A stretch of DNA of 64,000 nt from Ranitomeya imitator. Lineage: Eukaryota. The stretch spans positions 87,482,001 through 87,546,000 of the forward strand of contig NC_091288.1 of assembly GCF_032444005.1 (NCBI RefSeq), in the 5' to 3' direction. Positions 4,016-14,999 of the stretch are shown here, piece after piece. Positions within the stretch are counted from its first letter, which is position 1. The number at the start of each line of letters is the position of its first letter. The translations under genes and the position numbers were made by a program. The notes beneath the pieces are model-generated. The model saw nothing but the letters and a program-made list of their open reading frames with translations, did not search any database and had not been told where the DNA came from.

Positions 4016-5084
4016 AAAAATGTAAATGGTTTGCCCCCACGTAAGGGCAATGGGGTACTCGGTACCGAGTCCTTCAGTTCCGACAGCGAGGATGTCACGG
4101 TGGCCCGACCCCGACCGTGGCCCTATGAGGGGCGCCCAATAAAAGGCAAAGTTTGTAGATAACGGTAGTGTTCGTGACGCCACCTGTGGTATTCGGTCAG
4201 AGTGACCGACACTGCTTAGGGGTCCGCCGGGGTGATGGAATAGCAGCTAGATGGTATACCTTCCCACAGGTTAAATATATCCCCAGGGCTTCCCAAAAAT
4301 GTAGATGTTGATGGTGGATGGTGCAAGGTGCGGTAAATAACGAGGACACAATGGGTGCAGTCTCTTTACCTTTACTGAAGGCTTCAGCAACCACAGTCCA
4401 GAGTGCCAGATGACAGGGTAGGCAGGGTCCGGCCGGTCTGATGGCAATTCCAGAGTCCCCTTATCCAGGTGGAAATCAGTAGCCTTCCCCTTGCGCACAG
4501 TAACGTAGTAGGTCCCTACTTACATTAGCTACCATAAGGTCCTCGCTGTTGTTACTTCTCTCTCTGTCCCCCAGATGGATGGGACATACCCGTATGACGG
4601 TGGTGGCCTGAGGCTATTTTATAGGGACCCCTCCTCCGCGTTGCCACCTTGTCTGCTTAGGTGTTTAGGTCAGACAGCTAACTTGGAATCGACTGCCCTG
4701 CCGGTCTCTGAAGTAAAGCGTAGAGTCTATTACTCCCTCGGTGTTCCGGCCACCAGTTCTGCACTTCAGATGGAGGCAGCCTGCTTCTAGCTGGTCTCCC
4801 ACTGATGTTTCACTCCTGTTGCTATGACTTCTGTGCTAACTCAGTACGGCACACTTCCCTTCTTGTCCTTTCTTAGGAGGCTGCCGCATGGGTTGCAGGT
4901 GCAGCTCCATGTCCTTCTTTCCCACTGAGCCACTGATGTTCTTTCCTTTTTCCTCTGTCTGCATAACAGGAAATCCCTGGGCCGAGCCCTGTCTGCTTCC
5001 CTCCCTCTGCTTCTCCTGACTCCAACTGACTCTGACTGACTCCCTAACCAACCCACCAGTTTTACCCTTTGTGAGGAGTGGCCT

Positions 5085-11962: not shown

Positions 11963-12043
11963 GATGATATTGCTGAGAAGAATGAAGCTATCCTTTCACT
12001 TACTGCAGACCTACAACATGCCCATACGGAAAATGAAAAGTTG
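11963..12043 (+). CDS. FLACC1: FLACC1-like exon (DDIAEKNEAILSLTADLQHAHTENEKL)
   Basis: catttgcag acceptor, gtaagt donor; 81 nt, phase 0 to 0; heptad pattern. Confidence 0.87.
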
Positions 12044-12474
12044 GTAAGTGGCAACAAATAACTACATGCCTTATACTTACACGTGGTGAAATGGACTAAT
12101 AGCAAGTAGCGGTACATATATTTGAGGCACATAAGGTGTCATATAGATTTATTGGGAAATGTTCCATTTTATACTGTACTATGGCATTATTCTCCATACA
12201 TGTATAGTATCTTAAGGTAAGGTGCATATGACGTCTTTTAAACTTTGGCAAAGCGGGACAAGTATTTGTAAGCAGAAGCCACTCCAGGAAACGCTGGCGT
12301 CTTTTGCATTTTTTTCTAGCACACTACAAAATATGCCAGGAATCTTGTCTGTCTGTCTGTCTCTTCTGACTCCCCATAGGTTTATTTAGTTTGTGGCGTC
12401 TTCCAAGAAGAAGCCACCGAAAGAATAGTCACGTCAGTTGTTTTGACTGATTTGTATCTTTTGAAACTTGAAGG

Positions 12475-12630
12475 TTTCTCTTTTTTTGTGTAGGTTTCCT
12501 CTGGGTTCTCCGGTTTCCTCCCACACTCCAATCATATACTGATAGGGAATTTAGATTGTGAGCCCCAATGGGGACAGTGATGATAATGACTGACAGTTCT
12601 GTAGAACAAACTGCCGCTATATGTATAAGC
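12475..12630 (+). mobile_element. SINE fragment with L2-derived tail
   Basis: GGTTTCCTCTGGGTTCTCCGGTTTCCTCCCACACTCCA core followed by AGATTGTGAGCCCCAATGGGGACAG. Confidence 0.55.
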
Positions 12631-12786
12631 AAGAAATATAAACAAATAAGCAGGATTAATAAAAAATTTGGCAATTAATGTCATTTGTTGAACACTCCTT
12701 TTCGATAAATGAAACAGTTTTTATTGAAGTTGCAGGATTACTACTCTTCTGTAACGGTTTCCCTTCGCTATAAAAAAATATATATA

Positions 12787-13554
12787 CCGTATTTTTTGGA
12801 CTATAAGATGCACTTTTTTCCCAAAAATTTTTTGGGGACAATAGGTGTGCGTCTTATAGTCTGAATATACTTACAAATACTGTGGCAGCAGCAGGAGTCG
12901 GGCGATTCTGCGGCGGTCCCAGTCCAACGCTGCCGGGCGATGCTCACACTCCCTTCCCAGGCTGGTGCGGATGGTGCAGCAGGTTCAGCGGTGGTGCGGG
13001 AGGGGGATCAATCTGAACTCAATCTGAGCATGTGCCCCCCGGCAGCCATTTACCTGGAGGCCACCACATCGCAGCATTGGATGTGCGGGGCCTCCGGATG
13101 TTCACAAAATGCTGACAGAGACCCCCCCCACTCCACAGAGCACCACCACCTCACCTGCGCACACCAGCCTCACCAGCCCACACCAACCTCAACTGCCCAC
13201 ACCAGCCTCAACTGCCCACACCAGCCGCACCTACCCAGACCAGCCGCACCTACCCACACCAGCCTCACCTGCCTACACCACCTCACCTGTGCACACCAGC
13301 CTCACCAGCCCACACCAGCCTCAACTGCCCACACCAGCTGCACCTACCCACGCCAGCCTCACCTGCCAGCCTGGAATGGGAGTCATTTCGCCGGACCACC
13401 GAACACCCCCTGTGACCACACTCCACCAGCGCTGCCGATCCCCCCCAGTAAGCTGAATTTGGACTGTAAGACGGACCCTCATTTGACACATTAATTTTTT
13501 TCCCCTATTTTCCTTCTGAAAATTTGGAGTGTTCTTATAGTCCGAAAAATACGG
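12787..13554. mobile_element. pogo/Tigger-like MITE with internal CACACCAGC-rich minisatellite (about 13130-13370)
   Basis: TIR CCGTATTTTT-GGACTATAAGA/TCTTATAGTCCGAAAAATACGG; TA on both sides. Confidence 0.75.
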
Positions 13555-13560
13555 TATATA

Positions 13561-13822
13561 AATATTGTGTCACTCTCCACAAGGAGAAACCTTACCCCTT
13601 AGATCCCAGTCCAGAGCCTCTCACCTAGCCAAATTAGTTCTCATGCTTCGCACTGACGAGGGCCAACAGCCCGAAACACCGTGTCTGGGAACTGAGATAC
13701 TGATTAGGCTTTTATCCTAAATCATATTGTACGACTCCTTAAAGGGTTGATTGTGACTTGTAGGATCACTATATCCAACAGGTGGTGCTATAGAGTTTAA
13801 GTCCTCTTTTTTTCTGAACAGG
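13561..13822 (+). mobile_element. Short retro-insertion carrying the hammerhead (Penelope-like pLTR fragment or retrozyme)
   Basis: flanked by 8-bp direct repeat GGTATATA (13553-13560, 13823-13830); no ORF; PLE association of minimal hammerheads is established knowledge. Confidence 0.65.
13627..13710 (+). ncRNA. Type I hammerhead ribozyme with intact catalytic core
   Basis: CTGACGA 13653-13659; helix II GGGC/GCCC with CAACA loop; GAAA 13673-13676; helix III ACAC-C-GTGT; GTC cleavage triplet 13683-13685; long imperfect helix I pairing 13627-13652 with 13686-13710. Confidence 0.85.
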
Positions 13823-14889
13823 CAATTTGCATGGTATATAGATAAGTGACAATTGTAAAAGATTATACTTTTTTTGACTCCTTGTGGTCATTTATTTTTC
13901 CAGAAGGAAACATTAAAGGGATTGTCCAGTTAAAACAAGTTATCACCTATTCATTGGATAGGTGGTAACTTGCTAATTGGTGGGTGTGTGATCTCTGGGA
14001 CTCAGGGAATTGGGGAACTCTTATCCCTGACAGGGAACTTTCATCTGTGTTACAAGATGGCGCAGCAGGTCAGGTGCTCAAGTACAATGCTGCTCCATTC
14101 TTACAGGGATAAAAGTTCCCCTTTCTGCCACTTAGTTCAAGTCTGAGCAGTCGGCCCCCCACAAATCCCCTGTGGATATGTGATAACTTATTTTTAACTG
14201 GCGGTGGTCTGTTCAATGTTCCAGCAATCCAGTGATTTTAATATAATTTGTACATGTGTAGCATTGGGCTAGGAAAGGAAGGTTCATGTAATGATTTTCT
14301 CTCATTTTATACATTTCTTTTTTGATGACAAAAGATATAAAATAATCCATCTGGCAATAGCAGAAGCTGAGTTTTACAAGCTCAGATAAGGATCTATGGA
14401 AAATCATTCCTAAACCTTATTCTTTATTCACTTCGGGGACCCAGACATGTTTTGGTGCTATCAACCAGCATGTCCAGTATACAGCTCCCAATGACTCTTA
14501 GATCCAGATGCACAAAGTGCTGGGAACTGTGTAGCAATAGATAGAAAAGTTATAATATTCTGTAAAATATAGACTTGATTATGTATTTAAAATAATAAAA
14601 TACATGTGCACAGAGGTCACGTGTTTCAGGTTTAGCAGCTGCTATGAGAAAGCTGCAAATCCTAATCTCAATGCCATTTATGTTTTACTGTTTTAGATAC
14701 GTAATAAAACCTTCACTTTATGGAATATCAAATTATCTCTAATGTTTTGTTTTTGTGTGTGTGTTTTGGTGCAAAAATCTAAACAATGAACTGATAGACA
14801 AATTATTTAATTAACCATAGGTAAATAATTATTGTATAAGAATTTAGTAGCTGAAATGTGTCATTTATGTTTGATGTTCCATTTTTAAG

Positions 14890-14999
14890 AAAAGTCAAAT
14901 TGACAAAATAGAGAAAAGCTTTGACCAAAGTGTCAGCAAAGTGGAGTCAAAATACAAGATCAGAATCCAGACTTTGATGAACGAGAATGCTGACTTAAG
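14890..14999 (+). CDS. FLACC1: FLACC1-like exon (KSQIDKIEKSFDQSVSKVESKYKIRIQTLMNENADL)
   Basis: ccatttttaag acceptor, gtaccg donor; 110 nt, phase 0 to 2; KYKIRIQTLMNENADL resembles the recalled human FLACC1 C-terminal KYKHTIQILTEENIHL. Confidence 0.87.

What the first reader, a model, noticed from the sequence alone, without database searches (positions are those of the whole stretch)
13627..13710. Core-intact hammerhead ribozyme on the sense strand of a FLACC1 intron
Seen: every canonical core base is present (C3-U4-G5-A6-C7-G8-A9, G10.1-C11.1, G12-A13-A14, A15.1-U16.1, GUC cleavage after 13685). Helix II has 4 bp with a 5-nt loop. An imperfect helix I of about 25 bp has one G-G mismatch at pair 3 and an internal loop that could contact loop II. 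Helix III (ACAC-C-GTGT) is near-palindromic and too tight for a monomer. Known: such helix III motifs cleave as dimers (double hammerheads) in newt satellite 2, Penelope pLTRs and retrozymes. Inference: it lies in the transcribed direction between exons 12043 and 14890, so FLACC1 pre-mRNA may be cut co-transcriptionally, or cut only when paired in trans with another copy of the repeat RNA. That would be a repeat-RNA-dependent switch on a host intron.
Basis: partly seen in the sequence, partly recalled or inferred. Interest (0 to 1): 0.8.

Follow-up and report, generated by a model that had tools for sequence, protein, structure and literature searches.

The report
Solo hammerhead retrozyme copy in intron
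The hammerhead ribozyme motif is real, but it is one truncated, slightly damaged copy of a 332-bp mobile repeat with at least 1,800 copies in this frog genome, and nothing indicates that it cuts or regulates the FLACC1 gene whose intron it sits in.

Summary
13627-13710 holds a canonical metazoan type I hammerhead. It lies sense-strand in the FLACC1 intron 12044-14889.

It is not a special element. It is a solo, 5'-truncated 0.82-unit copy (13568-13832) of a 332-bp non-coding tandem-repeat family. The family has a fixed 3' end, variable 5' ends and 8-15-bp target duplications, which makes it a non-LTR retrozyme of the newt satellite-2 type.

The 33-nt stretch from core to cleavage site occurs 1,826 times in this 5.96-Gb genome. 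The G·G mismatch in helix I is a rare defect: 8 of those 1,826 copies have it. It halves the predicted pairing of proximal helix I. Helix III is essentially unformed in a monomer, and no second copy lies within 64 kb.

RNA contigs from three studies join the two flanking exons correctly. The abundant repeat RNA all carries the family letters, not this copy's.

Published work shows that such amphibian hammerheads cleave poorly as monomers, and that about 43% of Xenopus retrozyme copies are intronic. This scan has 21 unchecked first-reader notes that mention hammerhead, intron and sense in this genome; the 8 shown are sense-strand intronic cases on other DNA.

Verdict: an ordinary member of a known class. 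The regulatory-switch idea is unsupported.

The parts
13568..13832 (+). Solo, 5'-truncated copy (0.82 unit; monomer coordinates 215-332 plus 1-154) of a 332-bp non-LTR retrozyme family
   Evidence: Alignment to tandem monomers of L028. 15 of 265 positions depart from the letter held by at least 60% of 49 other copies. It is the only copy in the window.
13553..13560 (.). Left copy of the putative 8-bp target-site duplication GGTATATA. It is followed by 7 unalignable bases, 13561-13567, at the 5' junction.
   Evidence: Other family copies show 10-15-bp duplications at the same 3' end (L010, L020, L028).
13833..13840 (.). Right copy of the putative target-site duplication GGTATATA, directly abutting the family's common 3' end ...GGCAATTTGCAT
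   Evidence: 25 of 30 loci have a block ending at monomer position 143-156.
13627..13652 (+). Hammerhead helix I, 5' strand. The proximal 6 positions are 13647-13652, the loop 1 side UGC is 13644-13646, and the distal helix is 13627-13643.
13653..13659 (+). Catalytic core C3 U4 G5 A6 C7 G8 A9 (CTGACGA)
   Evidence: Identical in 1,826 genomic copies.
13660..13672 (+). Helix II (4 bp, G10.1-C11.1 = 13660-13672) with 5-nt loop 2, CAACA
   Evidence: Pair probabilities 0.90-0.92.
13673..13675 (+). Core G12 A13 A14
13676..13684 (+). Helix III, near-palindrome ACAC-C-GUGU (A15.1 = 13676, U16.1 = 13684). It is unformed in a monomer and can pair with a second copy to give 8 bp around a C·C.
   Evidence: Monomer pair probability 0.002; self-duplex -8.8 kcal/mol
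13685..13686 (+). Predicted cleavage site: after C17 (13685) of the GUC triplet
   Evidence: Motif geometry. Some family insertions and arrays begin within a few bases of this site (L028, L021, L008, L024, L017, L022).
13686..13710 (+). Helix I, 3' strand. It carries this copy's three departures from the family: 13688 C>G (G·G at 1.3-2.3), 13692 T>C (loop 1) and 13706 T>A (A·A in the distal helix).
   Evidence: All RNA contigs read C at 13688 and T at 13706, and most read T at 13692. 13688G occurs in only 8 of 1,826 copies.
11963..12043 (+). FLACC1 coding exon upstream of the intron
   Evidence: (joint 12042/14889, GT..AG)
12044..14889 (+). FLACC1 intron (2,846 nt) that holds the copy in sense orientation
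   Evidence: skips 2846, GT..AG, in X1, X4, X7
14890..14999 (+). FLACC1 coding exon downstream of the intron

Best explanation
This is a dead-on-arrival retrotransposon fragment. An RNA of a 332-bp, non-coding, hammerhead-bearing tandem-repeat family (a non-LTR retrozyme of the newt satellite-2 type) was reverse-transcribed from its fixed 3' end into an AT-rich site of a FLACC1 intron. That left a 5'-truncated 0.82-unit copy flanked by an 8-bp target duplication.

In the family, the hammerhead serves the element's own life cycle. Multimeric transcripts are cut into unit-length RNAs by two neighbouring ribozymes that pair through their palindromic helix III. In this solo copy the core is still intact only because the copy is fairly young (about 6% from the family majority).

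The copy lacks a cis partner for helix III, and it has since gained a G·G mismatch at pair 1.3-2.3 next to the cleavage site plus two more helix I changes. It is transcribed passively as part of the intron, removed by splicing, and has no demonstrable effect on FLACC1.

Shown here: the motif, family membership, truncation, the common 3' end and duplications, copy number, rarity of the mismatch, correct splicing, and the origin of the repeat RNA from other copies. Inferred: target-primed reverse transcription by a Penelope-like reverse transcriptase, and little or no self-cleavage of this copy.
For: - **Family size and structure:** at least 730 candidate places, with the 40 scored at 95-97% identity. 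Tandem arrays have a 332-bp period, 5.4 units at 98% identity in L028, and at least 5 units in L029.
- **Insertion signature:** a common 3' end at monomer position 143-156 in 25 of 30 loci, with scattered 5' ends. Target duplications of 8-15 bp, including GGTATATA here.
- **Monomer properties:** 45.8% GC and no open frame longer than 67 aa.
- **Copy number:** the 33-nt core-to-cleavage stretch has 1,826 exact genomic copies, against 0 for the reversed-pattern control. Among these, 13688G occurs in 8 and the wobble-preserving T in 124.
- **Folding:** proximal helix I pair probabilities are 0.42-0.53 here, against 0.86-0.99 in a majority copy. The whole domain is 7.3 kcal/mol less stable, and helix III probability is 0.002.
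- **No partner nearby:** there is no other family copy and no other hammerhead in the 64-kb window.
- **RNA:** the exon-exon joint is seen in three runs. Repeat RNA reaches depth 350-8,900, and every contig reads C at 13688 and the family letter at 13706, 13721 and 13730.
- **Candidate partners:** open reverse transcriptase + GIY-YIG frames of at least 800 aa exist in the genome.
- **Literature:** amphibian retrozyme hammerheads self-cleave weakly as monomers and efficiently as dimers (PMC7229834). The canonical metazoan architecture is helix I 6 bp, helix II 4 bp and a short palindromic helix III (PMC4209133). In Xenopus, solo monomers are common and about 43% of retrozyme copies are intronic (bioRxiv 10.64898/2026.07.22.740005).
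Against: - No cleavage assay was possible, so 'inactive' is a prediction.
- The 96 nt from 13592 to 13687 show no departure from the family majority, while 13688-13832 shows 13. This could hint at constraint. However, the copy was picked because its core is intact, and the comparison loci were chosen for similarity to 13600-13730.
- Abundant family RNA is present in the same samples that express FLACC1, so a trans partner for helix III exists in principle.
- The link to Penelope-like elements was not shown. 25 GIY-YIG loci had no similarity to the monomer.
- The 8-bp duplication is separated from the first alignable base by 7 nt.
Confidence: 0.85

Rival explanations
1. The intronic hammerhead cuts FLACC1 pre-mRNA, either alone during transcription or after its helix III pairs in trans with abundant retrozyme RNA (a double hammerhead). 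FLACC1 output would then depend on the level of repeat RNA.
For: - The core is intact and in sense orientation in a transcribed intron.
- The helix III strand can form an 8-bp self-duplex of -8.8 kcal/mol.
- Family RNA is far more abundant than FLACC1 mRNA in the same runs: depth 350-8,900 against 29-64.
- Dimeric action of such hammerheads is documented (PMC7229834, PMC4209133).
Against: - Correctly spliced FLACC1 contigs are present.
- The G·G at 1.3-2.3 and two further helix I changes weaken the scaffold.
- Documented dimer cleavage is between tandem units of one transcript, not free trans partners (PMC7229834).
- With 1,826 identical cores in the genome, and with this scan's other unchecked notes of sense-intronic hammerheads in this genome, any such effect would be generic and not a FLACC1 switch.
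- From general knowledge: slow ribozyme cuts inside introns need not stop splicing, because the exons stay tethered to the polymerase (Dye, Gromak and Proudfoot 2006; Fong et al. 2009). This was not checked here.
- No locus-specific RNA end data exist.
Confidence: 0.07
2. The copy is a fragment of the terminal repeat (pLTR) of an autonomous Penelope-like element, not of a non-autonomous retrozyme or satellite.
For: Penelope-like elements carry hammerheads in their terminal repeats, and retrozymes are related to them (PMC4209133; bioRxiv 10.64898/2026.07.22.740005). The genome holds thousands of GIY-YIG candidates, and one open frame combining reverse transcriptase and GIY-YIG was confirmed.
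Against: - The family forms pure 332-bp tandem arrays without any long open frame.
- None of 30 family loci holds a Penelope-type frame next to the repeat.
- 25 GIY-YIG loci, 13 of them spanning 9.9 kb, show no similarity to the monomer and no canonical hammerhead.
Confidence: 0.05
3. The motif is a chance match to the hammerhead consensus and has no ribozyme ancestry.
For: Rfam 15 reports no hammerhead here, even at E<=10.
Against: - 0.02 matches are expected by chance.
- The motif is the conserved centre of a family with 1,826 identical cores.
- The family has tandem arrays and abundant RNA.
- Several insertion ends lie at the predicted cut site.
- Rfam also misses pristine family copies, so its silence reflects the 45-position model and not the sequence.
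Confidence: 0.01

Closest known systems
Metazoan non-LTR retrozymes (Cervera and de la Pena 2020, PMC7229834; Li, Clavereau and Pollet 2026 preprint, 10.64898/2026.07.22.740005)
   Same: - Tandem, non-coding repeats of about 170-400 bp with GC below 50%, each unit holding a type I hammerhead.
- Dispersed solo monomers as well as arrays.
- Target-site duplications.
- Abundant RNA.
- Amphibian members need two ribozymes to cleave well.
   Different: - This locus is only 0.82 of a unit, so by the preprint's definition it is a solo derivative that cannot transpose.
- This 332-bp family of a dendrobatid-like frog is not named in the papers read here.
- RNA circularity was not testable.
Newt satellite 2 (Epstein and Gall 1987; Forster et al. 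1988, as cited in PMC7229834)
   Same: Amphibian tandem repeat of about 330 bp with a type I hammerhead whose weak helix III makes it cleave as a double hammerhead.
   Different: Sequence homology to the newt or axolotl repeats was not tested because no reference sequence was available in the tools. Here helix III is a 4+4 near-palindrome with a single central C. The axolotl HHR_Amex1 has a 1-bp stem with a palindromic tetraloop.
Minimal hammerheads in the terminal repeats of Penelope-like elements (Cervera and de la Pena 2014, PMC4209133)
   Same: Type I topology, palindromic helix III, presumed dimeric action, massive copy numbers in frog genomes, and likely the same mobilising enzyme.
   Different: This motif is the canonical form, with a 6-bp helix I, loop 1 and a 4-bp helix II, not the minimal variant. 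No Penelope-type frame adjoins any copy examined.
Conserved intronic hammerheads of amniotes (Rfam HH9 and HH10)
   Same: A type I hammerhead in the sense strand of an intron of a protein-coding gene.
   Different: Those are single-copy and conserved at orthologous sites across species. This one is a copy of a young repeat with at least 1,800 members and gives no Rfam hit. Conservation at the orthologous site could not be tested.

Membership tests
Hammerhead ribozyme, type I (canonical metazoan form) | Conserved core nucleotides C3 U4 G5 A6 N7 G8 A9, G12 A13 A14, and the A15.1-U16.1 and G10.1-C11.1 pairs | tested here: met
   All are present at 13653-13659, 13673-13675, 13676/13684 and 13660/13672.
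Hammerhead ribozyme, type I (canonical metazoan form) | Cleavage triplet N-U-H (H is not G) followed by helix I | tested here: met
   GUC at 13683-13685, with helix I starting at 13686.
Hammerhead ribozyme, type I (canonical metazoan form) | Helix I of 6 bp up to an internal loop 1, and helix II of 4 bp with loop 2 (PMC4209133) | tested here: inconclusive
   Helix II is met. Helix I is 6/6 bp in the family but 5/6 here (G·G at 1.3-2.3), and one loop 1 base is changed.
Hammerhead ribozyme, type I (canonical metazoan form) | Short, palindromic helix III that favours a dimeric active form | tested here: met
   ACAC-C-GUGU. Monomer pair probability 0.002; self-duplex -8.8 kcal/mol.
Hammerhead ribozyme, type I (canonical metazoan form) | Match to the Rfam covariance model RF00163 at its gathering score | tested here: not met
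   No hit, even at E<=10, for this copy or for pristine copies. The 45-position model does find two other hammerheads in this genome.
Hammerhead ribozyme, type I (canonical metazoan form) | Site-specific self-cleavage giving 5'-OH and 2',3'-cyclic phosphate ends | not testable with these tools
   Only assembled contigs were available, and these cannot show RNA ends.
Non-LTR retrozyme | Tandem units of 170-400 bp, each with a type I hammerhead | tested here: met
   Met for the family (L028 5.4 units, L029 at least 5 units). This locus itself is a solo 0.82 unit.
Non-LTR retrozyme | Non-coding, GC below 50%, no LTR | tested here: met
   332 bp, 45.8% GC, longest stop-free stretch 67 aa in a trimer.
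Non-LTR retrozyme | Insertion with target-site duplications | tested here: met
   8 bp here; 10, 13 and 15 bp in L028, L010 and L020.
Non-LTR retrozyme | Abundant unit-length linear and circular RNA | tested here: inconclusive
   Family RNA contigs are at depth 350-8,900 in four runs of three studies. Length and circularity cannot be read from contigs, and the runs' RNA status is inferred from the spliced joints (X1, X4 and X7; X3 shows none).
Non-LTR retrozyme | Sequence relation to the terminal repeat of a Penelope-like element | tested here: inconclusive
   No similarity in 25 GIY-YIG loci, out of at least 3,742 candidates.
Conserved intronic hammerheads (HH9/HH10 type) | Single-copy motif conserved at the orthologous intron across species | tested here: not met
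   It is multi-copy, with 1,826 identical cores. The orthologous introns could not be fetched. There is no Rfam HH9 or HH10 hit.

The most novel reading that the evidence does not exclude
Solo hammerheads scattered in sense orientation through host introns might be completed in trans by the very abundant retrozyme RNA, through the palindromic helix III. Retrozyme expression would then cleave many host pre-mRNAs at once, FLACC1 among them. That would be a genome-wide, repeat-RNA-guided ribozyme network.
Probability: 0.03. Interest if true: 0.75.

Novelty: new member of a known kind. Interest (0 to 1): 0.15.

Why it matters
It matters little as a discovery. The locus is a routine solo copy of a known class of mobile element, and the proposed gene switch has no support.

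It is useful as a calibration case for three reasons:
- A hammerhead with a perfect core in a sense intron is expected hundreds of times in a genome that holds about 1,800 identical cores.
- Rfam misses this whole family.
- Copy-specific variants (13688G, 13706A and others) let one tell whether repeat RNA comes from a given locus.

If trans-completed cleavage of intronic solo copies were ever shown, it would link retrozyme activity to host gene expression. This copy, with its helix I defect, would be a poor place to look for that.

Tried and rejected
- **Rfam searches** at the gathering threshold and at E<=10, on the window, the locus and pristine copies, gave no hammerhead hit. I treated this as a limit of the model, not as evidence against the motif.
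- **Solved-structure search** with the two-exon peptide gave only chance coiled-coil hits.
- **Pfam and the protein atlas** on the Ranitomeya protein were uninformative. The gene was named only through homologues.
- **First RNA-run search** with 3.2 kb found only small shares. The exon-only query found the useful runs.
- **Orthologous FLACC1 loci** of Ranitomeya imitator, Dendrobates tinctorius and Anomaloglossus baeobatrachus could not be fetched, because the files were too large or the gene too long. Presence or absence of the insertion in relatives, and the empty site, remain untested.
- **Penelope link:** 12 short and 13 9.9-kb GIY-YIG loci had no similarity to the monomer and no canonical hammerhead.
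- **Long open frames** beside family copies turned out to be a Ty3/gypsy-type pol gene interrupted by a copy (L007), not a partner element.
- **Thermodynamic 'fraction in hammerhead fold'** is tiny for both the window and majority copies, because helix III is not stable. It does not discriminate between them. Only the helix I probabilities do.
- **The mutation-free stretch 13592-13687** was considered as a sign of selection. I rejected it because of ascertainment bias and because the comparison loci were chosen by similarity to that stretch.
- **Complex prediction, structure prediction and covariance-model building** were not used. The family is too uniform for covariation, and no protein is at issue.

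Full report
**1. The observation**

- Helix I 5' strand: 13627-13652.
- CTGACGA core: 13653-13659.
- Helix II: GGGC/GCCC with the loop CAACA, 13660-13672.
- GAA: 13673-13675.
- Helix III: ACAC-C-GTGT, 13676-13684.
- C17: 13685.
- Helix I 3' strand: 13686-13710, with G13688 facing G13650.

A pattern covering the core and helix II matches once in the window, where shuffles give 0.02. The 96-nt stretch folds better than shuffles (z = -2.8). Rfam 15 reports nothing here at the gathering threshold or at E<=10. It also reports nothing for pristine copies of the same repeat, although its 45-position type I model does recognise two other hammerheads in this genome. The motif call therefore rests on manual anatomy and on the family evidence below.

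**2. Gene context**

The exons 11963-12043 and 14890-14999 have proper splice signals. They are joined in RNA contigs of runs X1, X4 and X7, which come from three studies ('skips 2846, GT..AG'). The downstream exon retrieves a Ranitomeya imitator protein that holds both exons contiguously. The named homologues of that protein are frog 'flagellum-associated coiled-coil domain-containing protein 1', for example Dendrobates tinctorius at 90% identity. tblastn places six FLACC1 exons on the + strand of the window. The hammerhead is therefore in the sense strand of a real, transcribed FLACC1 intron (12044-14889).

**3. What the element is**

The 131 bases around the motif have at least 730 candidate places in the 5.96-Gb genome. 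The 40 that were scored are 95-97% identical.

Homology to other copies runs from 13568 to 13832/13839 only. In L028 the same sequence forms 5.4 tandem units of 332 bp at 98% identity, and L029 holds at least 5 units. Mapped on a monomer that starts at the cleavage site, the window copy covers positions 215-332 and 1-154. That is 0.82 of a unit, and it is the only copy in the 64-kb window.

Across 30 loci, 25 have a block whose 3' end falls at monomer position 143-156 (...GGCAATTTGCAT), while the 5' ends are scattered. Several copies are flanked by direct duplications: 13 bp in L010, 15 bp in L020 and 10 bp in L028. Here the duplication is GGTATATA at 13553-13560 and 13833-13840.

A fixed 3' end, 5' truncation and variable-length duplications are the signature of target-primed reverse transcription. 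The monomer is 45.8% GC and has no open frame above 67 aa. Eight block starts lie within 14 bases of the predicted cleavage site, where about three are expected. This is a modest sign that cleaved RNA is the template.

All of this matches the published description of metazoan non-LTR retrozymes and newt satellite 2 (PMC7229834). It also matches the 'canonical' metazoan type I hammerhead: helix I 6 bp, helix II 4 bp, and a short palindromic helix III that works as a dimer (PMC4209133).

**4. How this copy compares with its family**

The 33 bases from the core to the cleavage site occur 1,826 times in the genome, against 0 for the reversed control. An intact core is therefore the rule and not a distinction.

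Within the hammerhead, the window copy departs from the majority at three positions, all in the 3' strand of helix I:
- 13688 C>G creates the G·G at pair 1.3-2.3.
- 13692 T>C changes a loop 1 base.
- 13706 T>A creates an A·A in the distal helix.

Over its whole length the copy differs from the majority at 15 of 265 positions, about 6%. None of these falls in 13592-13687. I do not read that as selection. The copy was noticed because its core is intact, and the comparison loci were chosen by similarity to 13600-13730.

**5. Predicted activity**

| Measure | Window copy | Majority copy |
|---|---|---|
| Proximal helix I pair probabilities | 0.42-0.53 (0 at the mismatch) | 0.86-0.99 |
| Minimum free energy of the domain | -28.4 kcal/mol | -35.7 kcal/mol |
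| Helix III pair probability as a monomer | 0.002 | 0.003 |

The window copy's minimum-energy fold replaces proximal helix I with an alternative pairing. Two helix III strands can form an 8-bp duplex of -8.8 kcal/mol.

Published assays give the same picture. Axolotl retrozyme hammerheads cleave weakly within monomeric repeats and much better in dimeric constructs (PMC7229834). Minimal Penelope-type motifs show no detectable cleavage as single units (PMC4209133).

This copy has no cis partner and a damaged helix I. I infer little or no self-cleavage. This is a prediction and was not measured.

**6. RNA evidence**

Only assembled contigs were available, so RNA ends and strand cannot be read.
- The FLACC1 exon-exon junction is present at depth 29 (X1), 64.5 (X4) and 2.6 (X7). 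The intron is therefore removed and the mRNA is made.
- The repeat region is covered at depth 350-8,900 by many contigs at 90-95% identity.
- Every contig reads C at 13688 and the family letter at 13706, 13721 and 13730. At 13692 and 13738 most contigs do. No contig carries the window copy's letters at 13688, 13706, 13721 or 13730.
- The abundant repeat RNA therefore comes from other copies. This shows that the family is strongly expressed and that nothing stable derives from this locus.
- Traces of unique intron sequence appear on both sides of the copy (12209-12433 in X3, 14351-14534 in X1). These are compatible with pre-mRNA or DNA carry-over.

**7. The regulatory-switch idea**

In its favour: sense orientation, an intact core, a possible helix III duplex, and plentiful family RNA in the same samples.

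Against it:
- Splicing is normal.
- Helix I is damaged.
- There is no documented free-trans action of such ribozymes in the papers read.
- The situation is generic. With 1,826 identical cores and about 43% of Xenopus retrozyme copies lying in introns (bioRxiv 10.64898/2026.07.22.740005), hundreds of sense-intronic copies are expected for this family alone.
- This scan's own unchecked notes include 21 that mention hammerhead, intron and sense in this genome. The 8 shown describe sense-strand intronic cases, for example in MAPRE2, ARHGAP1, CLCN7 and SMC1B.
- From general knowledge, not checked here: slow ribozyme cleavage inside an intron need not prevent splicing.

I put measurable in vivo cleavage with any effect on FLACC1 at about 7%.

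**8. Mobilising enzyme**

The genome holds thousands of GIY-YIG candidates, with open frames up to 930 aa. One 800-aa frame combines reverse transcriptase and GIY-YIG, which is the Penelope architecture. However, 25 such loci share no sequence with the 332-bp monomer and show no canonical hammerhead. No family locus has such a frame beside it. Mobilisation by Penelope-like elements is therefore taken from the literature and was not shown here.

**9. Not done**

The orthologous introns of three relatives could not be fetched. The age of the insertion, the empty site and any conservation remain untested.

**10. Verdict**

It is a solo, truncated, slightly decayed copy of a hammerhead-bearing non-LTR retrozyme family. 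That class is already described in amphibians and was found repeatedly by this scan elsewhere in the same genome.

Noticed in passing
window 12485-12592: A dispersed repeat (also in L011 and L027) is covered by RNA contigs at very high depth, about 2,000-25,000 in all four runs. This is far above the retrozyme. It is probably a SINE-like element embedded in many transcripts. I did not identify it.
   Followed up: no
window 13144-13367: A 19-bp minisatellite (CACCAGCCTCACCTGCCCA, 11.9 units, 84% matches) lies 200 bp upstream of the retrozyme copy in the same intron.
   Followed up: no
L007:1396-1639 (G000 C7, about 1.7 Mb before the window): A 244-bp copy of the same family sits between two long open frames of a Ty3/gypsy-type pol gene. 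One frame holds protease and reverse transcriptase, the other RNase H and integrase. This looks like an insertion that split the gene.
   Followed up: partly
L002, L004, L009, L012, L015, L016, L023-L026, L030: Many family loci are fold-back structures: two arms in opposite orientation meeting at a single joint. A second cluster of block ends lies at monomer position 244-258, in 12 blocks. An earlier report in this scan described the same arrangement for a 384-bp family.
   Followed up: no
G000 genome-wide; L064, L065: Rfam's Hammerhead_1 model passes only 2 of 74 scored candidates in this genome and misses the whole 1,826-copy family. Rfam-based counts of hammerheads in frog genomes will be large underestimates.
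   Followed up: partly
L043, L045 and other GIY-YIG loci (for example G000 C10:83710571-83719459): Penelope-like open frames of 800-930 aa occur, often as inverted pairs 3-5 kb apart. No canonical hammerhead was found in their flanks with a simple descriptor.
   Followed up: partly
window 4277-4507 (- strand) against P0001 residues 50-132: The N-terminal part of the Ranitomeya imitator 'unnamed protein' matches the opposite strand of the window (47% identity). Its C-terminal half matches FLACC1 exons on the + strand. That public gene model is probably chimeric.
   Followed up: no
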